Assembly (NCBI GenBank): GCA_013115145.1
Contig: JAAPAO010000309.1
Coordinates: 1 to 40,807, forward strand
Length of the DNA stretch: 40,807 bases
Direction: 5' to 3'
DNA from: Perkinsus chesapeaki ATCC PRA-425
Taxonomy: Eukaryota; Protista; Perkinsozoa
A program made the position numbers and the translations under genes. Positions 17,026 through 40,597 of the stretch are shown here, piece after piece (position 1 is the stretch's first letter; each line of letters opens with the position of its first letter). The notes under the pieces are model-generated. The model ran no database searches and had not been told where the DNA came from. It saw only the letters and a program-made list of their open reading frames with translations.

Positions 17026-20000
17026 CTACTGCTGGAAAAGGAATCGGAGGTCTTCGACTGCTAACTTTTGAAGGGCGCCTTGCTCATTGCCACCGACCGT
17101 GCCGTCGAACACCAACTGTTTCTTCTCCTGAACCATTGAGCGTTGACGTGGAAGACTGAGGGTAGCTACCTGTAAGGCAAGTATCCTCTCCTCCACCGTG
17201 TCCTGAGTAATGAACCTCACTGCATTCACAGGCTTTGTCTGCCCAAGTCGATGGGCCCGCTGAATCGCCTGCTGTTCATAGGCGGGATTCCACCAGGGAT
17301 CTGAGCATCTTCTTGAACGTACGGGCCAGGAAGCACTAACGAGCGTAGCCTTGATATTTTACACTAATGCGATGATCCGTTTCAAAGCTAAGAAGGTTGC
17401 AAGCTGTGAACACTCGGCCATGAGAAGCTGGACGTGTTTCACGAATGAAGGACGCATAAAAACAATGCAAGAGTTTCACATGCGCGTGAAACACGGTGCT
17501 ACCGTAGAGGATGGGTATATAATGCATATATCTGCTCACCTAGCAAGAAGACGCTGCTCGCCGCCTGTAGGTTCAAACCTTCTCCACCCGCCTTTAAGGA
17601 TATTAAAAGTAGGGTGAACTCGGGATCCTAATACCACACACAGACGACGGTCCTCCGGTGAGAGGATACCTGAAAATTACCTGCCGGAACGAGAGAAGTA
17701 TGTTAGAGCGTTGTGTCATAGGTATGCCGCCATGGAGAACCTGCAAAGGTGCGCTCCTATTTACAAGGGAGCTACTGGCCATACCAGACAGGATATTCCT
17801 TCTCTGCGCAGTTTAAAGTTGACGAGCTCCAGCATGCGACTGAACTGCGAGAAGACCAGCCTGAGGGGAATATCTTATCAGCAGCAGTGCAGGAGTTTGC
17901 AAGCGCCTCACCCCTTGGCAGTAGGGTCCTGCTCCTTCATCTTGCGAACCTCGTCCAGCAGTGCATCTATCTTGGCAGAGGATTCAAACTCATCAGCTTT
18001 GATGCGATTCAGAATGCTTCTCTTGGATGATCCGCCAATCGTCGGGGATTCCTTAACCACATCTGGCGGAGGTGATGACCCTTGCCGGCTCTCCTCATCA
18101 TCATCGACGGCCTGAGAGTTAGAACTTAATTCAATGAAGACGGTGCTGCCCCTACCTGTCCAAAGGTAACAGTGATAGGAGCGAAGCAAGCCGGGCATCC
18201 AATGCCTCCATTCAATGGCAGTTGAGGTGCCTCACGGAGGAAGTCTCGCACACATTCACTAAAATGGAGTAAGTGAGAATGCCTTGTAAGGAGAATTTAT
18301 CTTACTTGTGGAAACTATGACCGCAGGTGGCCCGAGCTTGAGCCTCATCTTCGTTGCTGGTCCGAGCCGGAATATCATCTTGACAGAGGACCTGCAAGAA
18401 TAGCTCCTGGATTGGCCACTCCGGAATGGTGACGTACGCAGATATCGGCCCTGTCCTGACCGGCGGCGCTCTTAGCTGGTATCGATCCACAGTCCATACC
18501 GTGGACGATCAAATAAGGGTGATCGACGGCCTGATGGAACATATCACACATGGCGGCGCTACGCTGACAAGCCTACCTGCCGCAGTCTTGTCAGGAGATC
18601 GAAGATATGGGCATAGTTATTAAGAACAGTGCCTTCATCAGCGTACACATTAAATCTCAGTTGACTCTGCATTGCCAGGCTCTCATAGAAATCTTTCTCA
18701 CTGGCCGTTAGCTTGGTTTTCCGAATGCTAACTGTCATCGGTGGCAGGTGCAGATCCGCTGCTCTCTCCTCTTTTGTTCGACGTAATAGAAGGCGGTCTA
18801 AGACTTGTGTTCGAAGCTCCTTCAATGCGTCCTTTCCAACACCAGCAAAACCGTGCCTGACCAGATATAGGCTTGCTAAAGCTTCCGGAAGTGCAGGGGA
18901 GTCAGTTTCATACCGCTCTTCTCTCAACCCAATCTAAATTCTGAGTACCCCCATCAAACTTACTTAAGAATTGGTTTGCTTATAGTCTGATTGAAATAAG
19001 AGTAGTGTTGCATCTTCGTATGCCCACAGCGTTTGCAATAGCGGTTATCTTCGAAACGGTAAGCCATCGATTTACAGTTACAGTCCTTCGACTTGCAGAA
19101 ATAGAATGCATAGGGGTCGTTCTTCAAGAACCTTAACAAGCCATAGTTGCTAAAATCTATCATGTGACTCGAATACCGTATCAAGGAGTAGAGCTCGCCG
19201 ACTCTGTTTTGGAGCGGGGTTCCGCTCAGCCCCCACCTGTACTCGGCTCTCAGGGCGTATCTGTAAGAAGCTATAGCCATGAAGAATCACTACGTCAGCC
19301 CATTACGCTCCCAAGGCAGTTGTTGTGGTTCTGCCTTTGATGCGATGAGCCTCGTCTAGGATAACTCTCCCCCACCGAACACTGTGCAACGCAGACTTGG
19401 ACAGATCCAGATCGCTTCGTTCGCAATCTGATCGGGTTGCGATCAGCGGGCAGACTTTGCGGTAAAGACAAACCTGAGGTGTCCTCCCCCTCAACTGCAT
19501 TCTCCTCCTCTCTCCTAGCTGCAGCGCGTGTAATCCTCCCAGCCCTGGTAGCGGTCTTGTCCTTGGCTTGCCTCCCAGTTTTCTTGCTGGTCACCACCTC
19601 GAGGTCACTGTAACTGGACTGGCTGTATTCAGATGAACTGTCATCACTATCAGCGCTGCCATCATCTTCGCTGAGCTCATAGTCTTCGTCATCATCGTTA
19701 GCCTTTGACTTAGCGACTGGTCCCCTGCCAGCCTGGGGCTTAGCAGTCTGTCGTAGTCTGGCCACAGCAGCGGCACGTCTTTTCTGAGCAGCCATCTTCC
19801 GCTTTTTACTGGGGGGAGGGGGCGCATCCGACTCGGAGCTCGACTCCGAAGAAGAAGAAGAAGAGTCCGAGACGGAAAGTGTTGTCTTTGCTTCATTGAG
19901 GAGATCAGATGTATCAGGGCTACTGCTGCCTAGCATTATAGGAGAGGACCGTCTGCCTTCACTTGACTGAGGAGCGGCAGTACTCGCAGCGCTCGCAGCG

Positions 20001-22032
20001 CTCGCTGGGCTCGCTTTCGCCACCTTGCATCGCCGCGAGGGTGCCCGACGGCGGGATGAGGTTGATGGCTCGGCTTTCATTTCAGCCTCCGCCGTATCGT
20101 TAGAGTAGTCCTTAGTCTTTGCTCCCTTTGTGGTCTTCTGTTCAGTAGAGTCTGCTGCGCTTTCTTTGCCGGGAGCCGCCTTAGCGGTCTTCCTCATTCT
20201 GGCGATTCGTTCGTTATCGACTGCCATTCGCACACGAGCCACAAGATCAGCCTTCAGACCGGAGCTATCGAGGCCCAGCTCCCTGCACTTGGATCGCAAC
20301 TCTGCCACTTTGAGCTTGCCGATATCCGTGGCCGAAAGACGCTCAGGCTTCTGCTCACCAGCACCTTCGTCATCCACTTGGTCGCTGGAAGGTTTGCTTT
20401 CATCGTCCTGCATTTCCAGTATAAGTGAGACTAGCTCCGCTCGACGCATATGATTCGGTATCTCCATTCCAGGATATCTGATCTGGTATGATCCTTACAG
20501 GTCATCGTCTACCATCGTCTCACCTGTCCATAATAACCTCTTTAAGCTGCCTCATCGTCATCCGTCTGATGCTGCTCTCATCCAGATCCTCATGCTGTTT
20601 AATTTCTTCGTGTTTGGCCCTCTGCTTTGCCCAGTAATATTCCTTAACCTTCCATATACTCGCCTTCTCTGCATTCTCCATACCAGCCTTCGCCATCACT
20701 TCTCGAAGTACATTGCCCATCGTAGGAGGCTTGTAATCGCTTTCAGCTTTCCTTTTCTTGCCACGAGAGTTCGATGCCTCTGGACTGTCAGGCGGAGCGG
20801 CGCTGGCTGTTGGAATGCCCAGCGTCTTTTTGGCAGCTTCCGCGGCTTCCCTGAATTTACGGTGGGTCTTGCTCTGCTTCGCGGTTTTCTCTGCATCCGG
20901 TCCGCACATGTACTTTTGGTGCCAAAGTAGCTTATCAGGCAAGAAGGCTCGATGGCAATACTGACATATGGCCTTCAGCTTATTCAACTGCTTTCTATAT
21001 TCATACTCCATCGTCTGATAAGTGGTCAGCACGACGTCGAACTTAAGAAGATCTTCTCCTTTTAAACGGTTGCTGCCGTGATATACGTGAACCTTTAGCG
21101 ATTCCGGTCTAAGGTAGCGATGGATCTCGCTATACCACTGCATAACAGCGGCCACCGGACACACCACCAGAGTGGGGCCTTTTGTCTCAGGCAACCGCTT
21201 CATAACGAGAGCCACAGCTTGGATGGTTTTACCCATCCCCATCTCATCAGCCAGGATGCCACCTCTGCACTCTTGTGTGAGCTCCTGGTTACACATCCAG
21301 GCTAGACCTTCTCTTTGGAAGGGAAGAAGAGGAATAACCAACTGATACGGAGAACTAATTTGCGCATGCAGAGAGCAATCCGACTCACCTCATCAGGAGG
21401 CGGGAATTTGTCGACGAGAAGCTTTGACACCATGTGTTTCATTCCACCGATGTCCAGCTCTTCAACGGGTTTCTTTTCATTCCGCTTCTGGAAGACTTCG
21501 ATAAGGCACTCTTTGTTATCATCAGCCAGCTCTTCAAACCCCATGATATTGCTCTTAAACCACTCGGCTGGATCACAACAGAGATTCTCAGCAGACTCTT
21601 CATTCCCTTCCCTAAGAGAACTGAGTCATACCAAGACTCGCAGCAGGAGAGAACTCACCCGCCCACAAGTCCCTCCAGCGTTCCGTTTATCTCCAAGAAT
21701 TTAAACGGCGCACACTCAGCATGAAACCATATGGTAATCGCGCCGAGATTGCCCCGTGGATCCTCTACTGGGTATCCCATCCGCAGCGAGGACTTCGGGA
21801 TCTTGTGCCCACATCGGCGGCAGGTACTCAAGCCAGATTTAGCCAGATCGGTTTCGAATTTCCAACTCTGCAGTGAAGCAGCTTGCTTCTTCTTCAGCTT
21901 GCCCTGCATGTCCTCGGCGATCCAATTTTTGGTGGTGGGATCCCACATGACGCCCGGAGCAGGCTTCTTCAGCTGAGAGTGTTCCGCGGACAAAAAGTTC
22001 TCGAGATCGAACGACACAGGAACGACGTCCAT
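17026..22032 (-). CDS. Rad16/Rad5-like SNF2 helicase-RING copy 1, with N-terminal PARP-type zinc finger and internal SAP domain(s)
   Basis: zf-[21 protein letters not shown]...WFHAEC; [13 protein letters not shown]; [30 protein letters not shown]; [11 protein letters not shown]; [11 protein letters not shown]; LLRRTK; RING C|VLC...CGHSFH; [14 protein letters not shown]; DPWWNP...[11 protein letters not shown]; ends DLRFLFQQ*. Confidence 0.92.
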
Positions 22033-22449
22033 GTGGAAGGAGAATGGGGCGAGGCGCCGCCGCGAATAGTCACAACAGAACTGCGCAAATACTACAAGCC
22101 AACCTTGAACACAGGCCTCGGAAAGCGAGTCTGCGATTGTCCCATCCCAGATTGAACATCTACTCAACTCGGCTAATTGACTATTCGTCTTCTTGCTCGC
22201 ACCTCCGAGGCATCCCTGTCCCAGTCCCATCGTCGTAGCACGCTCGATTTCTCTCGCCAGAAAAATTCCTTGGGCATGACATGTTACGGAGAAGGAGGAT
22301 TGATAAGGAAAGGATTTGAAGATTTGCGGATTTTTCTGTTGTCCACATCGATTGCGAGGAACAGGACAGAGCCACATACAGAGTGCCAACTGGATGAAGC
22401 TAGAAGTCACGCCATTCCGACCTCCGCGAAATACAGCCCATAGCGTATA

Positions 22450-22529
22450 TGACAGCTGTGGGGTTCGAACCCACGCCCTTTCGGACTGGCGCCTTAAGCC
22501 AGCGCCTTAGACCACTCGGCCAAACTGTC
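22450..22529 (-). tRNA. tRNA-Leu(AAG)
   Basis: The reverse complement reads GACAGTTTGGCCGAGTGGTCTAAGGCGCTGGCTTAAGGCGCCAGTCCGAAAGGGCGTGGGTTCGAACCCCACAGCTGTCA. Acceptor, D, anticodon (CTGGC-TTAAGGC-GCCAG), long variable and T arms are all present. Confidence 0.97.
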
Positions 22530-22857
22530 GGTAATGTATAACTCTACCCCCAAGGCCACAAGGGTAAACGAAGGGGTGATTACAACCTGCTGAACGGCAC
22601 TACGCGCCACAAATCCCTCTTATCCCTGGAAAAAGCGTTTTCTGAGCAGCTCAGGTTGAGCTTTGGCGATTTAGTGACATCTCGCCCGTAGCTCCCTCAG
22701 TTCACTCCCTAACAGACCAACCTAATTTTATTATACTGGCCGACTCTCAGAATGTCCTAACGCCCATATACTCCTTCCCTCCCAAGCATACGGCAGTAGC
22801 CAGGCAAGACTTGAACGCAAGAAAAGGGGGCAAGAAAAGAATTAAACTGTCACGTCA

Positions 22858-24026
22858 CTAATACCACGAGGTACTCCTATTAAATCTACAGTTGCCTTTA
22901 CCTGACAAGTTTACGGCATCTGGAGATATGTTGCGATAAACCTCACCACCACTATTTCCTTTTCCTTTACTCCAGTAAGGTCTGCTCCCCGAACCCTTCC
23001 CTTTGAGCCGATGACTAGGCACAAGACGCACCGGTACACCGGGTGAGTGCCGGCTGTTCCTTGGCGAGGTCGCTGCTCCATTCCTCCACGAGTCGAGGTA
23101 CCCACTCCCCCGACTCTCGTTTGGAGTTATCGTATGAAGCTCTTCACTATCGGCGGTTGGAGCGCTATTGGAGGACGTTCCTTCGGAGCTTAGCCTCCAC
23201 GCTCCCAGATACTTCGAACCCTTATCCTTCACAGGCGTGTCAGTAGTATCGCAGTTCATCACATCAGGCATGCCAAGAGATGCCTCTCTCATCTCGTCTT
23301 TGTCGATTGCATCCAATGGTATAAGGGCGGACGGCGACACATAGCCGTCAACACAAAGTGGATCAATTCCCATATGCAGGCTCTCCTGGCTGTCAATTAT
23401 GTCAGCATGGCTCAGAGCTCCATGCTTCTCCCCTTCCGCTTCGACCGGAGTCCTCTTGGGAGACATGGACACAGCAGCCGGCTACGAGAGGACGACTCAG
23501 TGCCCCAGGTGGCTGGGGCCCTCCTACCTGCGTCTCACAGAAGCCTTGCGCTAATACGGCTTTCTTTTTCTGGGTCAGACTCCAGAAGCCCACTACGTGC
23601 CCAGCTAGCCAAGACTGTACACCAGAGACGCTGCAGAGAAGCAATGCCGGCTGAAAGGAGCTGATAACTTTTCTCTTACTTTCTTTCTCGACACAATCGA
23701 GCAAGACCCCGATCGCTGGACACCAACTCCTCCGGAAGGCAATGTATATGGAGGAAGAACGACCGGACACCATCGGAGCTGAATTTGTCTTCCGCTGGAT
23801 ATCCTATTCTCAAATCGCTTTCAAGAATCTTCCTCTCGCACTCGATACAATGCGTTCTACTGTGGCGTGGAGAATCAATGCTGAACCTCCAGTTATCGGC
23901 TACTGCTGCTGCTACCGTTGCTGCATCAGGCAATGTCCAGCATTCTCTTTGCCGGTCCCATATAGCCCCAGCCACCACTGTGGCGGAGCGTGGAGTTATC
24001 GAAGTACTCACCGCCCCCGTGGACAT
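22858..24026 (-). CDS. Stand-alone PARP-type zinc-finger protein with low-complexity tail, 3 exons
   Basis: GAIWDRQRECW...THCIECERKILESDLRIGY...FLHIHC|...SWLAGHVVGFWSL...ETQ|PAAVSMSPKR...KGKG...STSWY*. The introns are in phase. Confidence 0.8.
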
Positions 24027-24354
24027 ACACTGAATTACAACACCCCCTGGGATGAATTCCTATTGAAAGCCGAAACACAGCAGGCGGTGGCAATAAAGAA
24101 ACGATTATTCCAGATCTCATTCGTTAACTTAAGACTTTAGCTCCATTAGTAATACTATCATTGGCAGCAGCATTAACCTCTATACTGGTATACCCTTCCC
24201 GGGCCGTAATAGTGGTGTATCGGTATCGCATCTCTAGCAGGAGTAGAAGAAGGAGAGGAAGGGATACCTGAGATGGATTGTGAAACAACAACGGACAAGG
24301 TAACAAGTGCAAGCAACGAGTAGTTAGCTTTAAATTCACCACTCCTTCTCTCGG

Positions 24355-27300
24355 TTAAACCCGCCCGGATGTCTCACCTTCTTGGTCCGCGGGTAGCGGC
24401 GGGGGTGGTGATGGCTGTCGCGACCAGTGGCTTCCAGGCGTTGTCGGATAAGTGCTCGCATACGCCTCGAAGTTGCGTATTGTCGTTGGCGGCGGTGAAG
24501 TGTATGAAGGTGGTCCGTTATAACCATACGGATAGTATCCTCCAGAGGAAGAGTATCCACCACTCCATTCCCCACCAGAAGTATTCTGCCCCGCGAAGGT
24601 TGCACGGTAGGAGCGGCCAGCTGCTGAGTAGCTGCCTCTTGTTAAGCTCCAAGTAGGCTCGTTGTTCCTTGTCTGATCCCAGCCCACTGCCCTAGTAGTG
24701 ACATTGGAGGCATTCTGCTCACTCACCCTCGATTGCAAGCAGCCCGTGGAGCGAGTCGTCACTTCCGTGACCACGGCCGCAGGAGACTCGGCTGGCCGCA
24801 AGGTGCATTCCCCTTTCGGAGTGGCAGGCTCGCCGGCCGATGCCTCCCTAGGGTTCAGAACCACCCCCGAGGGCTTCTCTGCCACATCCTTGGTTTCGCC
24901 CCCGACACCGGACGCCGCCTGACGTTCGGCAGCTTTCGGAGATACAGACAGCTGTGGTTTCGCTGACACTTGGTCACGGCTGAGCAATACCGTCCGGTGC
25001 TCTTTACGTCTCCGCTTCTTATGACGCCTCGAGTGCCGGTTCGGAGAGTCCCCGGCACTATATGAGCAATGGCTGCTACTATGCCGATGAGATGAAGAAC
25101 AGTGACTGCTCCGTCGGCCTGTTGAAGATGTTGAGTGCCTACGAGCACTAGAACTTCTTCCTCTGCGGTGCTGGGATCCATGCCGAGACGATGCTCTCCG
25201 AGAGTGGCTACGATGCCGCGAGGAAGGGGCTTCAGACTGCCGTCGAGGGCCATCATCTGGCAAGCCTGTATCGAATTTTCCTCCAGTTCTCAGATCACCA
25301 TGTTCAGGCCACTCGGCAGCTGGATGATCGGTGCCTCCACGCACAGCCTCCTCTTGGGCTCCCTCCCCATCCAGAGCCTCCGCCGTACTCGCCACAGGTC
25401 CACTAGTATCCTCATTAGCTTCATGTCCGCCTGCATCCTTATTATTCAGAATGGAGTCCGAGCCCCACTCTAGCAGCTCCATAGAATCACTGCCTTCCAG
25501 CCTCCAATTCTCCTCGGCCCCCAATGGTAAAACCCCCGTCGGTTGCTCATCTGCATTAGCTGCTTCCCTCTCTGGCACAGTCACCTCATTAGTATCCTCC
25601 TCCTCAGCATGTCCATCTCCCCATACTTGGAACTCCTCCTCATCATCACAGTCCTCCCTCGGTGGACCTTGCCATTTCTTCTCCGCAGTGCGGGCGAAGC
25701 CCTCCTCACCAACGTGATGAGCTCCGACCGCTGAAGCCAGCGGTGAACCATCGCTATAGCTATTCATAGCCAAGCCGCCATCCTGCAGTTCCTCGTCTCC
25801 CAACTCTGGGCTCGGACTTCGGACCATTTCAGCAGTCACTGTAGAGGCACCCTCCGTGGCACGATCCGTCCCAGCGAATTCAGACTGCTGCGTGTCACCT
25901 GCCTCAGTAGGGCTACCCAGTGTTCGATTCTCCCCTTCCTGCTCCAGTGTTGGACTTGGACTTAATACTACCCCAGGCGGCACTGTAGAGGGCTGCTCCT
26001 CCGCCTTGAGTGTAGGAGACGCCTCTTCACGCTTGATGGCGATATGCAGCGGGCTCCTCCTCCGGCCCGGCCACTCCCGTTTCACCACTTCTTCTGTTTT
26101 CACAATGCCCGCAGGAGGAGTCGCAACCACCACTGGCTTTCCAACTGTATGGGAATTACTCACTTCCACTTCACCGCTCCGCCTCACAGTATCCCCTCTC
26201 GATGTTCGATCCAGTCCCTCCGGTAGAATAGACACCGGAGAGCTGCATGATGGCCCGCTCGACGATGATGTCCTAAGCCTGTCTTCCTCCTCCTCGGACT
26301 CATCGGACTCGGGTATCGGACTCACATACCTCCGTGGCGCCTGATGCTTCCTAGTTGCCACCTGAGGCTCTCTTGGCCTCGTTGGCCTTCTTCCAGTCTG
26401 TCCTCTGCCTACACCTCCATTCGATTTGGCTCCAGAAGGGCGGGCTTTAGAATGCGTTTTCTCCGACCATTTCCGTAGCCGTCTGCTGCAGTTGCTGCTG
26501 CTGCTGTTTGTCTGCCTATGGGACTTACTGCGTCTTATTGCCCTAGGCGAGGTGGGCAGACTTAGGTCATCACCGCCATCACGATTCTGTTCGCCTTGAC
26601 CAGTCGAAGCAGTGCTTGCTGTCGTGCTTGCGCTACCCTTTCTAGGCTCGTTTATTTTCTTTTGCTTCCTACCCCCAGCCTTCGGGCTCTGCTCAGCTGG
26701 TCGAGCTCTCTTTGACGGTCTACATTTCCCAGCCTTCGGTACCGCTATCGGCGCCGTTCTCCTTTCATCGGCTTCCTCATCCTCCCCATCACTGCTCGAC
26801 GTTGTCTGATCTTCCTCCCCTTGTTGCTTATCCAGCACTCTTCGGACAAGTAGATACCTCCGACCAGTGCCCACGAGGCCGAGCTGTCTACAGTACTTCC
26901 TCAGCGCGCTTATACCCAGTCCATCCAGCTGCTGTTTCGTCACCTTCCCGATCAGCACAGGTGCCTCGACAGGAGTATCCGGACTGGCCGGTGAAACCGG
27001 CGCCGGCGAAGGCTGGCGAGCAACCGCTTTCTGAGCGGGTGCCTTCTTAACCGATGTTTTCGGAGCCGGTGTCTTTTCAGCTGGTGCTTGCGGAGTTGAT
27101 GCCGGCTGTTGAACGGTGGCCGCGATGACCAGAGGAGGTTCTTGGGGTGCAGGAATCAACTCAGCGTTGCAGCTCTAAAGGGGACGGTGACACTCATTGG
27201 CAAGAATAAACAGATCCCACCAGACTCTCTCGGAAGCCCACCGCCAAATTGATTTGTCTCTCATCCTTGAGAGAGTTGAAGCCATGAACATGCTTCCCGA

Positions 27301-27712
27301 GCCATACGACCAGATGGCGAGTACTGAACAGGGGAGTGGAGAGAACGAACGCTGCATCATCACAGACCCACCTCTTCTGTCCGCAAAGCTCGCTCACTGC
27401 CGGGCACCCCTCGAAGACATCCTCTGGCAAGCAGTGCGCATGGACGTAAACGGTCCTAACACCGCCCGAACTGAATTTGTCGGCCACCGGGTAACCCAGC
27501 CTTAAATCATGCTCTAAGATCTTCCGCTCGCATCCGGAACAGTGCGTCTCGCTGTGCTGCGGCTCATCGACACTAAAAATCCATTTGTCCCGACGTCCAT
27601 TGCCGCTTGACGGCGACTCGAAAAGGCTCCAGCACATACGCTGGTCATCCCACTGAGCCTGGAACGCCGGCAGCTGTGGCCTGTATGGTGGCCTCTGGGG
27701 GCCCATTGACAT
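24355..27712 (-). CDS. PARP-type zinc finger + SAP domain + very long disordered region, 3 exons
   Basis: QAQWDDQRMCW...THCSGCERKILEHDLRLGY...YVHAHC|...VWLGKHVHGFNSL...ESL|SCNAELIPAP... SAP-like LDGLGISALRKYCRQLGLVGTGRRYLLVRRVL at about 26830-26930, within a 934-codon open last exon. Confidence 0.85.
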
Positions 27713-28169
27713 CAAAAAATGACTGAAGTGAAGGCCTGTTGAGGGGAAGACGACCGAAGAAGGAAACGTCACAAAAAGGGGACGAGAATTGAGCCTTGAG
27801 AGAAATACTCTACTGTATAGGATATATACAGGAAACAAGGAAGGAAAGTATATCTCTCTATGACAGGAAGGAAGATAGGAGACTGGTGATATGCATCGCA
27901 ATAAAAACACATGGCAAGCTCTATGACAGTAAAAGTAACTTAAGGTGTGTTATGACTTGGTATAAATAAAAGAGTAATGTGAATCGCTATGATACGAGGG
28001 AAGGAGGCAATGGAGTGATGAGGAGCCACCAGAAGAACTCAAGATGACCATATCGTTTGATGATAAACTGGCATGAGACCGACATGATACTTTACCGTCT
28101 GCAATACCAGACATAATAGAAAGGGCTGCTGCTGCATCTAGTCATTAATAATGAAGGAGATATATGAAT

Positions 28170-31100
28170 TCATAGTTGGAAGAGGAACTTCAGATCAGCG
28201 ATCGTCAACTTCTCGAGGGCTCCGTTAAAATTGCCGCCGATAGTTCCGTCGAATATCAACTGCTTCTTCTCCTGAATGATAAACGCACATCCAAGAAGTC
28301 CGACAAGCTCCGACACTCTCAGCAGCAAAGCTCCCTTCAAAATCTTAAGAAGCTGGAACACAGAGGGGGTATACCGCAGGCGCGCGCGGCGCGCATATGG
28401 TGGATGGTAAGTTATACATTCTATGCACATTCCGTCTCATACGTCTGTACTGGCGTAACAGACGTCGGGTAATGGACACAAGGCATGAGGCCTTCAGCCG
28501 AAGCAACTCACCTGGAGGGACTTGATCTGTTCCTCTATGGTGTTCTCAGAGATGAGATGATGACTCTTAACTTCCTTTTCTTGTCCAAGACGGTGGCAGC
28601 GCTGAATAGCCTGTTTCTCCAGCGCCGGGTTCCACCAAGGATCTGAGCAGCAGCCGAGTCGTCGGGCTTGTGCAGAGGAGCTTGATGACTCACCAAGAAT
28701 AAAGACATGACTTGCCCTCTGTAGGTTAAGGCCCTCTCCGCCAGCTGATATGGAGACGAGGAGAAGGCTGCAATCCGATGCTGAGGACTAAGGAGGCCAA
28801 CACATACAGTGGGACGGGCCGCGACATGCCTGACCTCCACGAAGGCACGTATAATTCTGGTGCGGACGGCCAAAGGAAGACCGCCGTGGATGATCTGAAT
28901 AAAGTGAAGAAAGAAGATATAAAGAAGGGCTCCTCCTTACAAAGGTAGTAATGCCTCGCGCTTTGAGGTGGTGCTGGCAAAGCTCTAGTAACTTAACGAA
29001 GCAAGAGAACACCAGTCTGAAGAGAGCGGCATGAGGCTCAGTGGGGACGGAGCTCTACTCCCTACCCCTTAGCAGTATGGTCCTCCCGTCTCATCTCCAA
29101 CACCTTCGTGATCAGTGCGTCTATCTTGGACGAGGACGGTATACCCGGTCCATGCATCTCTTGCAGCTGGTGTATAACACTATGCTTTCTAGTGAGGCTT
29201 GTCATTGCTAATAAAGCCCTTATTTCCTCGGATGACGGTGTTGTTGCCGCTTCAGGACTAACACTCACATGCGCCTGCGTACGGGAAGAATAGAGTTCTG
29301 TATTAAGTCGGCATTCTACCCATGAAGCATGCACGGTGGACCAACCGACACAGACAGGGCACTGCAAGTACGTGCTAGGAGACGCCGCACCGCAGCCTTC
29401 CGGATCATCATTGCCAAGGCAGTCCCTAAATGAGGAGGGTAGCGTCGAGAGTTATACCAGGCCCTACCTGTGAAACTCATGGCCACAATCCAACCACACT
29501 AAATCCGCCTCCTTGCCCGGGCCTGCGATGATTTCATCCTCACAGCTGTCCTGAAAGGGTACCAATCCGCCAAGAAAGGCTAGTCCTTTTGCCCTACGCA
29601 AAGCCTCAAGTCACCAATGTCTTCCGTGTTGACAAGATACTTATGATTCGCAGCCTAACACGAAGCACTCCACTCCACCGGGAATATCTCCTCCATACCA
29701 ATCTTAGCTTCATAATCAGAGACAAGACCTCCACCATGTGATCACCGACTTCATTTCTTTTCAGATACCCTCGTATCCTCGCTTGATAGAGATCGAAGAG
29801 ATCATCATAGAGCTCCCTATCCTTCGGCTTCATCGGTAGGTTATGAGTTGCACTGCTTAATTCAGGTAGACGGACTTCGACCTGCTTTTCGGCCTTAGTA
29901 CGTCTGAGCATCAGACGCTTCAGGACTTGGGATCTCAAGCGCTGAAGGCCTTCTGCTCCCTCGAGCGCGTCGAGTCCGTGACTGAATACCACCAAGCTTC
30001 CAGACGCGTCAGTAGCATGGTCGCTACTTTTTTATGGGGTTTGCAATCTGCCTAGTGAAATAGATATAATGGCTAATTTTAGGATGTCCGCAGGCTTTGC
30101 AGTTGCCAATGGGATGGTCTAGGATCACGCAATCGCAGCCTTCCCAGTCACACATTCGGGCCCCCTCGGGGACCACTCGCAGAAATCTGAGAAATATCCG
30201 AACATGAACACGCGCATGAACAGCCACGAACCGTATAAGGGAGAAAAGATCCCCCACTTTATTTTGCAGTGGGGTCCCCGAGAGGCACCACCTGCTCCTG
30301 GCCCTCAAGGCGCACCTGGTCAAACAAGACCTGGCGTAAAGCCTCGTATGACGTTAGACTTACGCTGCTTTAGCAGTTGAAGAATTGGCTGCCTTTATTT
30401 TATGCGCCTCATCGAGTACTATCCTCTCCCAGCGGAGGCCGTGTAGCAGTCCGGCATGTCGAAGGCGATCCTCAAGATCAGATCTATCGGTCCCTGGAAA
30501 GCAGGAGTCAATCACTGGCAGTCAAGAACTGGTCGGCCTACCCGTTTCGTCGCTGCTATCCTCCAAAGGCTCACTTCTCTTTATCCTCACTCGCCTCTTT
30601 GACGCTCCAGAGTTGCGTTGCGCTTCATTTGCGCGGGCTGGGTGTTCGACGGTCTCTGGCCTTGCATTCCAGCTGGATGCCCCTCCGCCCGTGGCGTTCG
30701 GCACAGGTGGTGTAGGCAATGTGCCACACTGCGGTGACGGCTTCTGCGCCTCGGTACGGATCGGCTCTCTCGGCGCGAATGTGGCCCGGATATTGCTGTC
30801 GACATTTTCCTTATCCTCTTCAGCTTTGATGCGTTTGGTCAGTCCCAGCAAAGAGCTATGATGCGCTCTATCTGGCAGCCCGCCTCTTTTGGTCGGAGGA
30901 CTGTACATCATGCGCTTCACGGCCCCGCCGTTCGGTCTCCGCCACGAAGGCTCAGTGGTCCCAGTGGGACCGCCGAGAAGAAGATTTTTCTGCGCAGCCG
31001 AGCCCGAGGCGGAGTGTGGCGAGCCGATTTGCAAACTTGGTTGCTCTTCACTCTCCACCTTGATGTAGCCCACATCGCCGGACCTCCTCAAGTCCCTGTC

Positions 31101-32583
31101 AGGCGTCAAGCGCGGCACGGATCCCCCCGGTTCACTTTTCACCCAGACGCCCTGGACAGCTATTCGAGACCCTGGCTGGGAAGGCTGCTCCTTCTTAACT
31201 GTGTCTGGATAGCCAGCGGCTCCCAGCAGAGTCCTTGCGCTGTTGGTAGAGAAATGGGAGTAGCCATTTATGCCGCTACTTGAGACCTCCTTAACGGCAC
31301 CAACCCTCGAGGACAACGACGTTACACCATGAGAGACAGGAGACGGATTGGCTATTGAAGAGCCGCGAAATGGCGCCTGTGACGCGAGTAGATCTCGCGC
31401 TTGCCCACCGGTTGGCAACCCGACATGAGATGGCCCTGCACTACTACTGCAAGTCGGTCGAGCATAAGGCATGCTCCGCACGCTGGGCCGAGGCTGACAG
31501 CTGTTACCATAGTCGAGGTGGCGCTCTTGCTGCTGCTGCTGTTGCTGCTGTTGTCCCAAACTGCCACCAAGCGTTCCCGCGGATGCAGAGCACTGCCGAG
31601 TTCCCTCCACTTTAGCCCGGAAGTCGCCCCCATTGGGTCCGCCAGCAGTAAAGAAGTCGTGAATGCTCCTGGTGGGGGCTTGCTGAGGTAGGTGATGGTA
31701 GATGGTCGGAGGACCTGTTTTGGCCTTGTTCGCGGCGAGACTTTTATAATGGCCTATGGTGTTAGCGAATAAGTCTTTCTGGAGGCTTTTACCCATAGAT
31801 GACGAAGGCTGGGCAGCATAGCTAGCCGCAGGAGGCTGAGCCGGTTTGGCATTCCAGGACGGTGCGGTGCCAGTATGCACCGCTCGACCGCTGGCGTCGA
31901 ACGTCCATGTTCTTGGCCTCTTCGGGCATTTATCTTTATGAGATGACAGCAGCTCGGGGAGCACCTTACGGCCGCAGTAGGAGCACTTCTTCTTCAGCTT
32001 ATTAAGCTGTGTCCTATACTCATACTCCACGGTCCTGTATGTGGTCAGAATAATATCGTAATTTCGCAACTGTTTGGCGGACACTTTGGACTTCCCATGA
32101 TAGGAAAGCACTTTCACGGTATCCGGCTGGAGGTATCTCTGGATCTCAGCCTCCCACTGCAACATGGCAGTAGTAGTGCAGATGATCAAGGTCGGATTGT
32201 GATGAGGTTGGAGCTTCTTAGTGATCAATGATACCGTTTGAATAGTCTTCCCCATACCCATCTCATCGGCTAGTATGCCCCCCTTACAGTCATCCTTCGC
32301 TTCTTGAGCGCACATCCAAGCCAACCCTTCCTTCTGGTATTCCAGAAGAGGCATCACCAACTGAAAAAGACGGTTGAACGATACACGCGTATTGAAAGGG
32401 TCTCACCTGAGTTGGTGGAGGGTACCTCAGGACCAGCTCATGGGGAATCTCTTGGACCATGGTCCCGAGCTCACGTTTGATCTGCGACCTCTCCTCCCTG
32501 GCCTTCTCATCCCCGGACGAGCAGAGGGAATCATCAGAGTTGGAGTCGTCGTACTCACGCTTCCAGAAGGCTTTTGGATACAT
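28170..32583 (-). CDS. Rad16/Rad5-like SNF2 helicase-RING copy 2, no zf-PARP
   Basis: [13 protein letters not shown]; [11 protein letters not shown]; [11 protein letters not shown]; LMLRRTK; CGHEFH...CPVC; [14 protein letters not shown]; DPWWNP...[11 protein letters not shown]; ends DLKFLFQL*. Confidence 0.9.
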
Positions 32584-32753
32584 AAGCTGATAAAATTAAC
32601 TTACTAATAAATCCTAAGGAGACCATCTCACATAAACAACACAAGAACGCATAGCATATAAAAAGGGCCGAGCCTGGGACGGTCGCAGCCATGCCGGCAT
32701 GAATGGCAGATCAAAGTTAGGGTACTAGTTATTATACGATACAGTGGGGGGGG

Positions 32754-35700
32754 CTAGAGCTGGAAGAGGAACCTGATGTCTTCCAACGATAGCCCTTCGA
32801 GACTGCCGTCACCGTCTATGATACCTCGGCAGATAGCACGCTTTTTCTCCTGAAAGCCAATATGTCATTTCCACTTTCCAAGGAGAACATTGAACGCAGC
32901 GAATAAGTAGCACTGTGACGGAACGAAGAAACTCGTAGCTTTCGGAGGAAAAGACCGGGAGACTCTCCTGGAGGAAAGGTGAACTTTGGAATCAAGAAGG
33001 GCCTCCAAAGTACATCAAACGAGGTCTGTCTCAGTCCCCGCATTCTTATGGAGCACCGATTGCAGCTCACCTGCAGCGTCACTATGCGCTCCTCTATAGT
33101 GCCACCAGTTGTCATTTTAATAACCTCAACGGGTTTAGTTTGTCCGAGACGGTGAGCCCTTTGGGTCGCCTGCTGTTCGACTGCTGGATTCCACCATGGA
33201 TCTGATACACCGTCAAACTCTGACTGTCGCTCAGTGACTCTATATAGGGAGGTCTCCCCTAACACCAACTAACTAAAGTACGACAATATCGAGATCTACA
33301 TAGCCGGAAGCCAGCCCTACAAGAATAGCAGTGCTTTTACCTAGGAGATATATATAATTAGCAACTTGAAGATTGAGGCCCTCACCACCAGACATGAGCG
33401 AAATGAGCAGTAATGGACAGGTGTCCGCCGAAGACTGACAAACATTACACAAGCGAAGCACAGTGGGAATTATAGGTACTTCAGTAAAGGTCTTCATAAC
33501 CTTCGACCGGAGAGGCAATGTAAGCTCACCATGGAGAATCTGAACGCACACACATCCACGATGGTAGATGACACTATCAACCTACTAACGTGTCGATGCC
33601 AGCCTGCTTCAGCCTATACTGGCATATCTCCAATAGAGACACAAAACAGGAAAATACGAGCCTGATTGGAAAGCATTCACTGCTGCCAATCCATATGCTC
33701 GACAACCTCCGCTGAGCGAAGCTACCGTTAAAATGAGCCACCTTTGGTGAAGTGGAAAGGTAAAAGTATATAGTGAGCAGTACAGGACGGTAAGGTCGGT
33801 TAACTCTAACAGGTTGATGCTTGGCGAAGCGAACTCCAACGAGATGTGTATCCTCACCCTTTCGCCTGCCCATCAGCACTCCTCATATCTTGGACCCCCG
33901 CTACGAGAGCCTCAACTTTGGAGGAGCTCTCGAATGCTGTTATTGGAATCTTCTTCAATATGCTCGTTTTCCGGGGCAGTCGGGGATCTCCCTGGAGTCT
34001 ACGAAGATACTCGAATTCAACGTTCTCCTCCGCGTCATCATCGGCATCATCAGGGCTCGAGAAAACCTACCCGAAAACTCATTTACTATAAACGAAGTTG
34101 GAAACTAGTTAATTTTCGTACATTGCCATAGCGGACATCCAGCGCCTGCTGGCAACAAGGGCATCGAGCGTCAGCGTTCCTGAGCCAGCTTTTAACACAG
34201 GAGCTGAGCAGTATAGGAACAGACTAACAGAAACGATGAAGATTCATGCTACTTATGAAAGAGGTGATCACAGACCGCTCTTGCCAAGGCCTGGCCAGCG
34301 CAAGCCGTCCTCTGTGGAATTTCATCGTGACATATACCCTGAGCAACAACACACTGTGGAGCGCTTGATGAGGATGGGACCGTACGCAGAAGAATGACTT
34401 CTGGGGGCTGAACTCGATCAAATATCGGTGGTTCGCTGCCTGAGCAGCCACAACGGTGCAAACGACATAATGGGTATGAAGATGCCCACCTGCCTCAACC
34501 GGAGGATCATCTTCAAGGCCTCGACCATCCGGTTGGCAAGTTGTCCGTCCTTCGCATACTTTCTGATGCGGTTGCGATAGAGCTCATACTTCGCCTGGTA
34601 ATATGCCGCCTCCTCGCCCGACATCACAGCGGCCGTGGGCCGCTCTTCCATCGGTGGCAGCTTCACGTCGCTCTCCCGCTGTGACTTTGTCCGCCGCAAC
34701 AGGAACTTACGGAGAAGCTGCGAGCGCAGCATTCTCAAACCCTCGGAACCCTCCTGGGAATTCAAGCCGGACCTGCTCGCAACTTCACCCGGAGATGCTG
34801 AGGAAACGGGCTTACCGTCTGATAGGATTAGCAATGAAGCGGTTGAAGTAATAGCAATGGGACGCTCTTGGATGGTCACAGGAATGGCACCTTTCTTCCC
34901 AAGGGTACTCCAACACATTACAGCGACAATCAGGAGTGTCGCAGCAAATAGTCGATAGAGGTCTCACTCGCAGGAACCTATCCGACCCTACTCCCCCGTC
35001 TGCTTTTCAGGGACGCCTACCTCGCCAACGAATAGATGTCACCAATTTTGTTTTGAATCGGAGTACCGGTGAGACACCACCGGTACCTGCATCTTAGGGC
35101 AAGACTAAAGGGAGCCAAGGTCGTTCATAAGGAAGTGCAGACTAGCCCCTTACCAGGCTTTAGTAGTGCTATTTCCTTTGTTCCTGATGCGATGCGCTTC
35201 ATCGAGACATACCCGTGACCATACAAGGCTATGTAACAACATGTTGTTTCTCAAACGCGCATCCAGGTCTGGCCTTTCGCACCCTAAATATAGGTCGACG
35301 ATGATCCATTTGGGGTAGGCTGTCCTCACCGATATCATCCTCGGCATCATACGTGTCCTGTGGTTGCCGCCATGGTTCGCCAGGCGTCGTAGTCGAGTCC
35401 CGACAACGCTTCTTGGCGCTGCCCCCAGGAGTGCCCCTTCGCTTGCGTGCAGGTGTCCCCTCAGACGTCTTGCTGCCGATGATTTTCACACGACGATTAA
35501 CTTCGGGTGTTGTCGGCTCGCCATGTTGCGGAGTAGGAGGGTTCACACCCGAACTGCTGCTCTCAGACTTTGGAGCTGCCGGCTCATCGACCTTGCACTC
35601 CTCCTTAAATTCGGCCTTCTCAACCGGAGATGAAACGTCAGATACAAGCTCAGCATCGATCACTGTCATTTCAGACTTCAGGGATCCGGCCAGAGACATG

Positions 35701-37022
35701 ACATCATCGTCCAAGTCGATGACCTCATCCTCCTCTTCCTTCAACGGTCGGCTATCATCGGACGAGATCGAGATCACCTCAGGATCTCTCGACGATCTCT
35801 CGGCGGCCCATCGATCACTCTCGGTTTTGCAAAACGGCTCGGTTTTCTCATGCTTCATGCTTGTTGCCACATGAGAACTGCCGAGATGATCGAAACGGTT
35901 CCTCCACGAGACGCCTCCGTAATTCGCTTCAGGTTTTACCCTGCAAGCTTCTTCCTTCAGAAATGCGTTATCTTCTTTGACATGTCCCGTGCGCCAACAA
36001 TGATGGTTGTCTTCTGCCCCCGTTTTCACACCGTCATACGAATCCTTCTTTACGTCGGCAGCAGTGGACACTGCTGTGTTCCAATGTGCTTGCTCGTTAC
36101 CCGTGCTGCTGCACCTCCTCGGCGATTGGTCATAATAGTTGATGAAGGTCGCCCCCCTTTTAAGCTCTGGTATTGGAGAATGACTGGGATAGTCGCTCGG
36201 TGTGCCATACCAATCACCACCGAATATGAAATCCTCGAAACGTGACCTTGTATCCGTGCTCGGCCTGCTGCAGCTCGGTGTGCTTGGCCGCGGTGTAGAG
36301 GCGTCATCTCCGAAAAAGGCATCCAGCACATCAGCTTCGTTGAAATCATAATCCCTAGGATCTCCTCCCCTCCCTGTCCGAGCGTCCCCGTCTCGATTGT
36401 GCCCACAGGCGTTTTTGTGCGCCTCGAGGAGCTCAGGCAGATAACAACGTGCGCAGAACTTGCAGCGGACCTTCAACTCGTTCACCTCCGCCCGGAACTC
36501 GCACTCCAACGTTTGGGGTGTTGTGAGGACAATGTCGTATTGTATCAGTTCCGGTGCGGTGATCTTATGATTCCCGTGGTAGAGATAGATTTTTAAAAAC
36601 TCCGTGCCGAAGTACTTATGTACCTCAGAGACCCACTGATGGAGCGTAGCAAGGGGTGCTATGATCAAGGTAGGCCCCTTCGTCTCCGGCTTTCTCACAG
36701 CGAGCATGGAGAGGAATTGGATGGTCTTACCCATCCCCATCTCGTCGGCTAGGATGCCACCGCGACGTTGCGGCAGTGTTTCTTGATTACACATCCAGGC
36801 TAGGCCTTCGCGCTGGTAAGGGAGTAGTTCAACACGTAACTGAACAAACAAGGTAAGGCTGAGAATGTGATACCATCTTACCTCGGAAGGCGGGGGGAAT
36901 CTGTGTAGTAGCTCTGGGGGTACATAACTGAATCCAATATCGACTTCGCTTTTTAGAGCCCCGGCATGAAGAGCATCATTTTCTCGGGCAGCGGTGCCTG
37001 GCGAAGATGGACTTGAATACAT
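32754..37022 (-). CDS. Rad16/Rad5-like SNF2 helicase-RING copy 3, no zf-PARP
   Basis: [13 protein letters not shown]; [11 protein letters not shown]; [11 protein letters not shown]; LLRRTK; RING C|GIC...CDHLFH...C...CPCC; [14 protein letters not shown]; QRAHRLGQ; ends DIRFLFQL*. Confidence 0.9.
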
Positions 37023-40259: not shown

Positions 40260-40597
40260 CTTCCAAGACGGACAAGGAATACAAATTTCCGGAATGCCCG
40301 TTCAGTATATAGTATTAGTGATTGTGAAGACTCAAGTGTTTCCGAGTATCCCATAATATAAACTATAAGTTTATATCACCTTACTCAAGGTTACTGAATA
40401 GATATATGGATTATAATCTCAGGATAGGCTATAGTGCTGCCTAATACCACTCATGCCACATACATTCGAACAAAGTATACGAACAGTTCAAACAAATACT
40501 ATCACAGTTTTTGTTTGCTAATTTGCAATGAATGCTTTATCATCATAAAGATGGACCGTACTGTAGTGGCCCTGACTAGACTATTTGTAGCAGACTC

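What the first reader, a model, noticed from the sequence alone, without database searches (positions are those of the whole stretch)
17026..37022. Split sensor/motor system: fused zf-PARP-SAP-Rad16 gene beside sensor-only and motor-only paralogs
Seen in sequence: copy 1 carries zf-PARP, SAP, SNF2 and RING. The two upstream genes (22858-24026, 24355-27712) carry the same N-terminal zf-PARP module, one also with a SAP domain, but no helicase. Helicase copies 2 and 3 begin directly before the ATPase with no zf-PARP or SAP. All three zf-PARP modules have a phase-2 intron after the HxxC and a W-x3-(H/N)(V/I)xGFxxL tail, pointing to common descent. Established: PARP-type zinc fingers bind DNA breaks (PARP1, ligase III) and Rad16-type enzymes are damage-associated translocases and E3 ligases. 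Inference: fission or domain shuffling may have produced interchangeable DNA-lesion sensor subunits, or dominant-negative decoys, for several motors. I do not know of such a modular repair or chromatin system.
Basis: partly seen in the sequence, partly recalled or inferred. Interest (0 to 1): 0.75.

Follow-up and report, generated by a model that had tools for sequence, protein, structure and literature searches.

The report
Perkinsus Rad16 cluster with zinc-finger-only paralogs
This stretch of the oyster-parasite relative Perkinsus chesapeaki holds one ordinary protist-type Rad16 DNA-repair gene, three duplicated copies that lost its DNA-break-sensing zinc finger, and two small genes that kept only that finger; the layout is real and conserved, but nothing shows that the pieces work together.

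Summary
The window is a whole 40,807-bp contig of Perkinsus chesapeaki. All the genes lie on the minus strand, in this order: helicase copy 4 (partial), copy 3, copy 2, gene 3, gene 2, tRNA-Leu, copy 1.

- **Copy 1** has a zf-PARP finger, an SNF2 domain with a SAP domain inside its lobe-1 insertion, a RING and Helicase_C. Dinoflagellate RAD16/rhp16 proteins have the same layout. The finger fused to Rad16 is also widespread in kinetoplastids, oomycetes and apicomplexans. Copy 1 is therefore an ordinary ortholog, not a novelty.
- **Copies 2 and 3** group with copy 1 in one Perkinsus-only clade. They lost the finger and SAP secondarily, evolve three to four times faster, and keep intact ATPase motifs.
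- **Genes 2 and 3** carry only the Rad16-type finger module plus disordered tails. They are conserved in P. olseni, and gene 2 also in P. marinus. Their zinc ligands are intact and dN is far below a saturated dS. A cDNA contig confirms splicing of one gene 2 intron.
- **P. olseni** has a third finger-only copy whose finger exon has a frame break.

The best reading is birth-and-death evolution by partial tandem duplication and domain loss. The "interchangeable sensor subunit" idea is untested. GenBank merges gene 3 with part of gene 2, and separate transcripts are not yet proven. Interest is modest.

The parts
17026..22032 (-). Copy 1: a full-length Rad16/rhp16-type gene of about 1,337 aa. It has a zf-PARP module, an SNF2 domain with SAP in the lobe-1 insertion, a RING and Helicase_C.
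   Evidence: Pfam on exon pieces and on the deposited model P0124. The P. olseni ortholog is 1,334 aa with the same domains. GenBank model KAF4663677.1 runs on into the downstream WD40 gene.
21389..22032 (-). Finger module of copy 1. Exon 1 is 22032-21659 (WD..W extension and the CX2C..HX2C core). A phase-2 intron is 21658-21612. Exon 2 is 21611-21389 (the W..GF..L tail and the linker ending FPPPDE).
   Evidence: Sequence reading; Pfam zf-PARP 5.7e-9; alignments A1 and A2.
20222..20326 (-). SAP domain of copy 1, inside the disordered insertion between SNF2 motifs Ia and II.
   Evidence: Pfam SAP 2.1e-12 at 46.8 bits, above the cut-off. Dinoflagellate Rad16 proteins P0007, P0021 and P0196 carry SAP at the same position.
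22450..22529 (-). tRNA-Leu(AAG) between gene 2 and copy 1.
   Evidence: ARAGORN. The same tRNA sits at the same place in P. olseni, L002 8989-9068.
22858..24026 (-). Gene 2: a finger-only gene of about 355 aa. Exon 1 is 24026-23680, intron 23679-23631 (phase 2), exon 2 23630-23528, intron 23527-23482, exon 3 23481-22858. The tail is disordered and carries conserved YLG(A/S)WR and VRLVPS.R.KGKG motifs.
   Evidence: Pfam zf-PARP 2.9e-4. Orthologs are P. olseni P0125 (338 aa) and P. marinus P0274 (319 aa, 62% identity). Run X1's cDNA contig skips exactly 23482-23527, with GT..AG ends on the minus strand. dN is 0.24 with dS saturated.
24355..27712 (-). Gene 3: a finger module, a SAP-like motif and a long disordered tail rich in Ser and Arg, about 1,090 aa. 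Exon 1 is 27712-27372, intron 27371-27324 (phase 2), exon 2 27323-27221, intron 27220-27175, exon 3 27174-24355.
   Evidence: Pfam zf-PARP 5e-5. The AlphaFold model of residues 1-152 has pLDDT 87.9, and its top 28 Foldseek hits are all PARP1 Zn1/Zn2 or ligase III zinc finger. The P. olseni ortholog lies at L002 4087-7156. dN is 0.245 and dS 1.7. GenBank model KAF4663678.1 (P0122) joins it to gene 2 exons 2-3.
26833..26919 (-). SAP-like motif of gene 3 (below the Pfam threshold).
   Evidence: Pfam SAP E 0.1 at 12.7 bits. The P. olseni ortholog scores E 0.003 at 17.6 bits. BLASTP against the copy 1 SAP gives 46% identity over 28 aa, E 9e-5.
28170..32583 (-). Copy 2: a helicase-only Rad16 paralog with no finger and no SAP. 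GKT, DEAH, motif VI and the C-terminal LKFLFQL are all present.
   Evidence: tblastn and Pfam; frame reading. The P. olseni ortholog P0001 is 75% identical in the N-lobe.
32757..37022 (-). Copy 3: a helicase-only Rad16 paralog with no finger and no SAP. The RING and motif VI are present.
   Evidence: The P. olseni ortholog is 1,115 aa with SNF2, RING and Helicase_C.
37684..40807 (-). Copy 4: the 3' two-thirds of a fourth Rad16 paralog, cut by the contig end. Its N-terminus is unknown.
   Evidence: ORF and tblastn matches to the SNF2 C-part, RING, motif VI and C-terminal pieces of copy 1.

Best explanation
This is a tandem Rad16 gene family specific to Perkinsus, shaped by duplication and domain loss.

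- Copy 1 is the conserved ortholog of the dinozoan and general protist Rad16/rhp16. This is an SNF2 translocase and RING E3 ligase with an N-terminal PARP-type zinc finger and a SAP motif in its lobe-1 insertion.
- An early full duplicate lost the finger and the SAP. It then multiplied to give helicase-only copies 2, 3 and probably 4.
- Partial duplications of the 5' end of the intact gene, landing just upstream of it, gave the finger-only genes. These are gene 3 (which kept a SAP-like motif), gene 2, and a third copy in P. olseni.
- The finger-only genes have been retained under purifying selection since before the three Perkinsus species split, and at least gene 2 is transcribed and spliced.

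Inferred mechanism:
- The finger-only proteins bind DNA nicks or breaks through a PARP1/ligase III-like finger.
- They act through their disordered tails as independent break-binding factors, or as competitors or regulators of copy 1 at lesions.
- The helicase-only paralogs work like the finger-less Rad16 of yeast and plants.

Shown here: the architecture, orthology, order of descent of the helicases, conservation, the fold, and one splice junction. Inferred: the duplication mechanism, DNA binding, and any functional link between the genes.
For: Identity and the known architecture:
- One search identifies the contig and its GenBank proteins.
- In one search the best named hits are RAD16/rhp16. 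PF00645 together with SNF2, RING and Helicase_C occurs in Trypanosoma, Phytomonas, Phytophthora, Cardiosporidium and Pavlovales, and with SAP as well in Symbiodinium, Durusdinium and Effrenium.
- One search places SAP in the same insertion in the dinoflagellate proteins.

Helicase descent:
- In one search the Perkinsus copies 1-3 from two species form one clade (99/99). Copy 1 is sister to copies 2+3 (97/94), and the outgroups carry the finger.

Finger modules:
- In some searches the finger-only modules form one clade (100/100) inside the cluster of Rad16-attached fingers.
- In some searches the best non-Perkinsus matches are all SNF2-bearing, and they match from the N-terminal extension onwards.

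Conservation and expression:
- Searches show conserved synteny in P. olseni, including the tRNA.
- One search finds the P. marinus ortholog of gene 2.
- In one search the finger exons have dN 0.24 against a saturated dS.
- Searches confirm the zf-PARP fold.
- One search shows a spliced cDNA contig across gene 2 intron 2.
- One search shows a frame break in the extra P. olseni copy, which fits birth-and-death turnover.
Against: - The finger tree does not place the stand-alone modules next to the copy 1 module. Their descent from copy 1, rather than from a lost N-terminus of the copy 2-4 ancestor, is not resolved.
- No trace of the SNF2 N-lobe exon remains in gene 3, so the partial-duplication route needs an extra deletion.
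- The only RNA evidence is a 207-nt contig that fits both the stand-alone model and the merged GenBank model.
- DNA binding is inferred from the fold and the zinc ligands alone.
- The finger-only modules have replaced the RG..G and W.H motifs that are typical of Rad16-type fingers.
Confidence: 0.6

Rival explanations
1. Split sensor/motor system. The finger-only proteins are trans-acting lesion-sensor subunits, or dominant-negative decoys, that pair with the helicase-only Rad16 paralogs. Together they rebuild in two polypeptides what copy 1 does in one.
For: - Both gene classes are conserved side by side in two species.
- P. olseni has three finger-only and three helicase-only genes.
- Both classes are under constraint.
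- The helicase-only copies keep intact motifs.
Against: - No interaction evidence exists, and no shared docking element was found.
- P. chesapeaki has two finger-only genes against at least three helicase-only genes, and the third P. olseni copy has a frame break.
- Finger-less Rad16 works without such a partner in yeast and plants (established knowledge).
- Adjacency is expected from tandem duplication alone.
Confidence: 0.13
2. One larger multi-finger gene. Gene 3 and gene 2, perhaps reaching copy 1, are exons of a single transcript, so the 'stand-alone' genes are an artefact of reading ORFs.
For: - They lie on the same strand with gaps of only 330-460 nt.
- GenBank model P0122 joins gene 3 to gene 2 exons 2-3, and the P. 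olseni model P0276 merges the copy 2 tail, the extra copy and gene 3.
- An AG lies 3 nt upstream of the gene 2 ATG.
- An earlier, unchecked note of this scan (s1-226048) reports a tRNA nested in an intron elsewhere in this genome.
Against: - The merged model skips the conserved zinc-binding exon of gene 2 by way of a roughly 550-nt intron, where local introns are 46-49 nt.
- Each gene ends in a stop codon and starts at an ATG that is conserved in three species.
- Independent P. olseni and P. marinus models call gene 2 alone.
- An in-frame stop lies 12 codons upstream of the gene 2 ATG.
Confidence: 0.12
3. Decaying relics. Genes 2 and 3 are non-functional 5' fragments left by partial duplication and are on their way to loss.
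For: - They evolve three times faster than the copy 1 finger.
- The extra P. olseni copy has a frame break and a GF-to-GS change.
- Their Pfam scores are the weakest of the three modules.
Against: - The ORFs, zinc ligands and splice sites are intact across species whose synonymous sites are saturated.
- The gene 2 tail keeps conserved motifs.
- A spliced transcript exists.
- The predicted fold is confident.
Confidence: 0.1

Closest known systems
Protist Rad16/rhp16 with an N-terminal PARP-type zinc finger. Examples are Symbiodinium and Effrenium RAD16 (which also carry SAP), Trypanosoma brucei 'DNA repair protein, putative', and Phytophthora rhp16.
   Same: Copy 1 has the same domain order, including SAP in the lobe-1 insertion as in dinoflagellates. 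It also has the Rad16-type C-terminus (..DL.FLFQ) and a C2HC knuckle after motif Ia.
   Different: Nothing essential differs for copy 1. The neighbouring finger-only and helicase-only paralogs were seen only in Perkinsus in these searches.
Saccharomyces cerevisiae Rad16 and plant RAD16, the SNF2 translocase and RING E3 of global-genome nucleotide excision repair.
   Same: Copies 2-4 have the same core of SNF2, RING and Helicase_C with no N-terminal finger. Plant RAD16 proteins are among the best named hits.
   Different: Copies 2-4 lost the finger secondarily within Perkinsus. They carry large, copy-specific disordered insertions. Partners such as Rad7 were not examined.
PARP1 Zn1/Zn2, the DNA ligase III-alpha zinc finger, and the fingers of plant ZDP, all zf-PARP nick or break sensors.
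   Same: The fold matches (Foldseek probability 1.00, target TM-score up to 0.75). The CX2C..HX2C ligands and the LR(x)G arginine are conserved.
   Different: The Perkinsus modules have an extra N-terminal WD..W hairpin and a C-terminal helix. They are single fingers, not tandem ones. They are not attached to a PARP, ligase or phosphatase domain. Sequence identity is only 15-23%.
The HIRAN domain of Rad5, HLTF and SHPRH-type SNF2-RING enzymes (named from my own knowledge, not tested here).
   Same: The logic is the same: a small N-terminal DNA-end-sensing domain fused to an SNF2-RING motor.
   Different: The fold and the SNF2 subfamily both differ. It is only an analogy for how copy 1 may work.

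Membership tests
Rad16/rhp16 subfamily of Rad5/16-like SNF2 ATPases | SNF2 N-terminal ATPase domain with motif I (GKT) and motif II (DEAH) | tested here: met
   Pfam SNF2-rel_dom scores 4e-29 for copy 1, 1.3e-28 for copy 2 and 1.7e-24 for copy 3. GMGKT and LDEAH are readable.
Rad16/rhp16 subfamily of Rad5/16-like SNF2 ATPases | RING finger inserted between the SNF2 N-domain and Helicase_C | tested here: met
   In P0124, zf-RING_2 lies at 1054-1108, between SNF2 and Helicase_C at 1165-1279. The RING cysteines of copies 2-4 were read. Copy 4 has CGD.FH in place of CGH.FH, and the first cysteine pair of copy 2 is uncertain across a splice site.
Rad16/rhp16 subfamily of Rad5/16-like SNF2 ATPases | Closest named relatives are Rad16/rhp16 rather than Rad5, HLTF or SHPRH | tested here: met
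   Named hits are 'DNA repair protein RAD16' and 'ATP-dependent helicase rhp16'. UniProt names P0124 rad16. No Rad5 or HLTF sequences were included in the tree, so this rests on hit names and ranking.
zf-PARP (PF00645) | Pfam score at or above the gathering cut-off of 39.3 bits | tested here: not met
   Copy 1 scores 37.0, gene 3 24.4-24.9, and gene 2 22.0 (its ortholog P0125 scores 26.8). All are significant by E-value but below the cut-off.
zf-PARP (PF00645) | CX2C-X(28-30)-HX2C zinc ligands | tested here: met
   The ligand columns C58, C61, H91 and C94 are invariant in all 23 aligned modules. All three window modules have them.
zf-PARP (PF00645) | PARP1/ligase III zinc-finger fold | tested here: met
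   The AlphaFold model of gene 3 residues 1-152 has pLDDT 87.9. Its top 28 Foldseek PDB hits are all PARP1 Zn1/Zn2 or the ligase III zinc finger, at probability 1.00.
zf-PARP (PF00645) | Binding to DNA nicks or breaks | not testable with these tools
   Needs a gel-shift or fluorescence-anisotropy assay with recombinant modules.
SAP domain (PF02037) | Pfam score at or above the cut-off of 23.9 bits | tested here: met
   The copy 1 SAP scores 46.8 bits.
SAP domain (PF02037) in gene 3 | Pfam score at or above the cut-off of 23.9 bits | tested here: not met
   P. chesapeaki scores 12.7 bits and P. olseni 17.6 bits. The motif is 46% identical over 28 aa to the copy 1 SAP, so it is SAP-like and probably homologous, but below threshold.
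   One spliced 207-nt cDNA contig lies across gene 2 intron 2. It fits both the stand-alone model and the merged model. Conserved ATGs and stop codons favour separate genes.
   No multimer prediction, interaction data or expression data were available.

The most novel reading that the evidence does not exclude
Perkinsus has taken the protist Rad16 apart. Conserved finger-only proteins (genes 2 and 3) serve as exchangeable DNA-break-sensing subunits or competitive regulators for the three finger-less Rad16 motors encoded next to them. That would be a two-part version of an enzyme that is a single chain everywhere else.
Probability: 0.12. Interest if true: 0.6.

Novelty: new variant of a known kind. 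Interest (0 to 1): 0.3.

Why it matters
If the finger-only proteins really cooperate or compete with the Rad16 motors, Perkinsus would be a natural experiment on what the PARP-type finger contributes to protist Rad16. That fusion is widespread in trypanosomes, dinoflagellates, oomycetes and apicomplexans, yet it has hardly been studied.

As things stand, the locus is mainly a clean example of domain loss and partial duplication in a tandem family. It also corrects three deposited gene models (KAF4663677.1, KAF4663678.1 and the P. olseni FOL46_007910), each of which merges neighbouring genes.

Tried and rejected
- **RNA evidence.** The run search listed only two tiny runs of the same species. 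One 207-nt contig lay on the stretch, and it covered nothing of gene 3 or the exon 1 junctions.
- **Literature.** Four searches for zf-PARP with SNF2 or Rad16 found no study of this fusion. There were only domain-list mentions for Toxoplasma and T. cruzi.
- **PDB sequence search.** A search with the N-lobe does not separate SNF2 subfamilies.
- **DUF5710.** A weak Pfam hit of the N-terminal WD..W extension of the gene 2 orthologs (E 0.0075) was not reproduced in copy 1, gene 3 or eight Rad16-type homologs, so I dropped it.
- **dN/dS.** Synonymous sites are saturated between P. chesapeaki and P. olseni, so only an upper-bound argument is possible.
- **Simple gene fission.** I rejected this because the finger-only genes are not interleaved with the helicase-only genes.
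- **Haplotype or assembly duplication.** I rejected this because the copies are only 45-55% identical and are orthologously conserved in P. olseni.
- **Spliced models.** Window exons were searched one by one by reference, and full-length comparisons used deposited database proteins.
Full report
**What the window is.** An exact look-up of proteins found by a profile search shows that the window is a whole 40,807-bp contig of Perkinsus chesapeaki. GenBank proteins KAF4663677.1 (FOL47_005594, 'rad16') and KAF4663678.1 (FOL47_005596, 'SAP domain-containing') both sit on a contig of exactly this length. All genes of the finding lie on the minus strand and have short GT-AG introns of 46-49 nt.

Read 5' to 3' on that strand, the order is:
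- helicase copy 4, partial, cut by the contig end (40807-37684)
- copy 3 (37022-32757)
- copy 2 (32583-28170)
- gene 3 (27712-24355)
- gene 2 (24026-22858)
- tRNA-Leu(AAG) (22529-22450)
- copy 1 (22032-17026)

**Checking the observation.**
- Pfam on single exons finds zf-PARP in copy 1 (5.7e-9), gene 2 (2.9e-4) and gene 3 (5e-5). It finds SNF2 in copies 1-3 and a strong SAP (2.1e-12) in copy 1.
- On the deposited copy 1 protein the order is zf-PARP 63-159, SNF2 from 207, SAP 523-557, RING 1054-1108 and Helicase_C 1165-1279. The SAP therefore lies inside the lobe-1 insertion of the ATPase, not at the N-terminus.
- tblastn with the three finger peptides finds exactly three modules in the window, and none upstream of copies 2 or 3. 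The P. olseni counterpart of copies 4-3-2 also has none.
- Genes 2 and 3 are 45-50% identical to each other in the module, and about 30-36% identical to copy 1.
- The SAP of gene 3 is below threshold at 12.7 bits, and at 17.6 bits in the P. olseni ortholog. It is 46% identical over 28 residues to the copy 1 SAP (E 9e-5).
- All zf-PARP scores fall below the Pfam gathering score. I therefore folded gene 3 residues 1-152 with an alignment of 23 modules. The model has pLDDT 87.9, and its top 28 Foldseek hits in the PDB are all PARP1 Zn1/Zn2 or the ligase III zinc finger. The four zinc ligands are invariant in the alignment.

**The fused architecture is not new.**
- A word search with the N-lobe of copy 2 returned proteins named RAD16 or rhp16.
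- Many protist members carry PF00645 together with SNF2, RING and Helicase_C. These include Trypanosoma, Phytomonas, Phytophthora nicotianae, Cardiosporidium, a Pavlovales alga and many unnamed transcripts.
- The dinoflagellates Symbiodinium, Durusdinium and Effrenium also carry SAP.
- Pfam coordinates show that their SAP sits in the same place as in copy 1, after the first part of SNF2.
- A Toxoplasma survey of SNF2 ATPases and a T. cruzi RING survey list the same domain set in passing (PMC12215852 and PMC5976635). I found no paper that studies the fusion.
- Copy 1 is thus the ordinary ortholog of the Perkinsus plus dinoflagellate lineage.

**Descent of the helicase-only copies.**
- I built a maximum-likelihood tree of the single-exon N-lobe (150 aa). 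It used three P. chesapeaki copies, three P. olseni copies and 54 homologs.
- All Perkinsus copies fall in one clade (99/99). Copy 1 is sister to copies 2+3 (97/94), and each copy pairs with its P. olseni ortholog.
- The outgroups on all sides carry the finger, so copies 2 and 3 lost the finger and the SAP after duplication within the Perkinsus lineage.
- These copies evolve faster. N-lobe dN against P. olseni is 0.18 for copy 2 and 0.26 for copy 3, against 0.06 for copy 1.
- They still keep GKT, DEAH, motif VI, most RING ligands and the Rad16-type C-terminus.
- The N-terminus of copy 4 lies beyond the contig end.

**The finger-only genes are conserved.**
- P. olseni contig L002 shows the same order: the copy 2 tail, an extra finger-only copy, the gene 3 ortholog, the gene 2 ortholog, tRNA-Leu(AAG), the copy 1 ortholog (1,334 aa) and a separate WD40 gene.
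- Gene 2 has stand-alone deposited models in P. olseni (338 aa) and P. marinus (319 aa, 62% identical). All three species share an ATG start and tail motifs such as KYLGAWR, YLGSWR and VRLVPS.R.KGKG.
- Between P. chesapeaki and P. olseni, synonymous sites are saturated. The finger exons of genes 2 and 3 nevertheless have dN of only 0.24, against 0.08 for copy 1. This indicates purifying selection, though weaker than on copy 1.
- The extra P. olseni copy has a one-base frame break inside its finger exon and a GF-to-GS change. It may be decaying, and P. chesapeaki has no such copy.

**Descent of the finger modules.**
- In the profile search, the best non-Perkinsus single-finger matches are all SNF2-bearing proteins. 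They match from the N-terminal WD..W extension onwards.
- Plant ZDP-type and other multi-finger proteins match only the finger core.
- In trees, the finger-only modules form one strongly supported clade (100/100) on a long stem. That clade sits inside the poorly resolved cluster of Rad16-attached fingers.
- A sister relation to the copy 1 finger is not recovered, but it is not rejected either (log-likelihood difference 1.94, AU p 0.41).
- Common descent from the Rad16 N-terminal module is therefore supported by module type, shared intron phase and position, adjacency and the SAP similarity. Whether the source was copy 1 itself or the lost N-terminus of the copy 2-4 ancestor remains open.
- Gene order favours partial 5' duplication, because the finger-only genes sit directly upstream of the intact gene and are not interleaved with the helicase-only genes. 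A tandem duplication that ends inside a gene leaves a truncated 5' copy upstream of an intact one. Gene 3 would then have needed a further loss of the N-lobe exon, of which no trace remains.

**Are genes 2 and 3 separate genes?**
- The only RNA evidence is a 207-nt contig from a small 2015 run of the same species. It lies on 23312-23481 and 23528-23564 and skips 46 nt with GT..AG ends on the minus strand. That is exactly the predicted second intron of gene 2. Gene 2 is therefore transcribed and spliced.
- This junction is shared by the stand-alone model and by the GenBank model P0122.
- P0122 joins the end of gene 3 to gene 2 exons 2-3 and skips the zinc-binding exon of gene 2 through a roughly 550-nt intron. 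That model would encode a finger tail without its core, and it ignores an exon conserved in three species. I consider it a prediction error.
- Two other deposited models look like similar errors. P0124 merges copy 1 with the WD40 gene, which P. olseni keeps apart. The P. olseni model P0276 merges the copy 2 tail, the extra copy and gene 3.
- Stop codons, conserved ATGs and an in-frame stop 12 codons upstream of the gene 2 ATG favour separate genes.
- The tRNA between gene 2 and copy 1 is weak support only, because an earlier unchecked note of this scan reports a tRNA nested in an intron elsewhere in this genome.
- From my own knowledge, Perkinsus mRNAs are trans-spliced with a spliced leader. 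Closely packed same-strand genes could therefore be co-transcribed and then separated. I did not test this.

**Function.**
- Shown: the fold, the zinc ligands, conservation and one splice.
- Inferred from established knowledge of PARP1 Zn1/Zn2 and the ligase III zinc finger: the modules bind DNA nicks or breaks. The arginine of the LR.G motif is invariant.
- Inferred from yeast Rad16: the helicase copies are translocase and E3 enzymes of excision repair.
- Nothing available bears on whether the finger-only proteins pair with the helicase-only paralogs, compete with copy 1, or act alone. I give the pairing idea about one chance in eight.

**Method limits.**
- Window exons were searched one by one by reference.
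- The finger trees rest on about 100-120 columns, and the N-lobe tree on 164.

Noticed in passing
Its RING has CGD.FH where the other copies have CGH.FH. Whether it carries a finger is unknown.
   Followed up: partly
window 22450-22529 (-); L002 8989-9068: A tRNA-Leu(AAG) lies between gene 2 and copy 1, on the same strand as the genes. It is conserved at the same spot in P. olseni.
   Followed up: partly
window 14856-22032 and 22858-27712; L002 204-7156: Three deposited gene models merge neighbouring genes. KAF4663677.1 merges copy 1 with the downstream WD40 gene. KAF4663678.1 merges gene 3 with gene 2 exons 2-3 and skips the gene 2 finger exon. P. olseni FOL46_007910 merges the copy 2 tail, the extra finger copy and gene 3.
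   Followed up: yes
L002 1581-3536 (+), P. olseni: An extra finger-only gene lies between copy 2 and gene 3 and is absent from P. chesapeaki. Its finger exon has a one-base frame break near 1700-1720, and its tail has GS in place of GF. It could be a pseudogene or an assembly error.
   Followed up: partly
window 3418-3834, 5400-5948, 8278-8760, 13428-13982 (-): Four tandem paralogs of a small protein of about 140-185 aa share HLPAKYCIEIAYGSY..KLYVRHEVTF..YNYRW..PWWRNKRGLK..PMHYNPCADAPQ. None of the three copies scanned (5400-5948, 8278-8760, 13428-13982) has a Pfam match.
   Followed up: partly
window 20900-20970, 31930-32000, 36400-36470 (-), approximate: A conserved C2HC-type zinc knuckle (C..C..LP..L..H...C) follows the TTY motif in the N-lobe of copies 1-3. 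It gives weak zf-C2HC_2 hits, and some protist Rad16 homologs carry the same precomputed family (PF13913).
   Followed up: no
window 19295-20467, 30522-31800, 35229-36230 (-): Each complete helicase copy has a different long disordered insertion at the same lobe-1 site, and only copy 1 keeps SAP there. This agrees with another first-stage note on this stretch.
   Followed up: partly
window 33-950 (+): A proline-rich ORF starts with three copies of a unit of about 17 aa (ASTPPVKAAREKSGPP.). I did not examine it.
   Followed up: no
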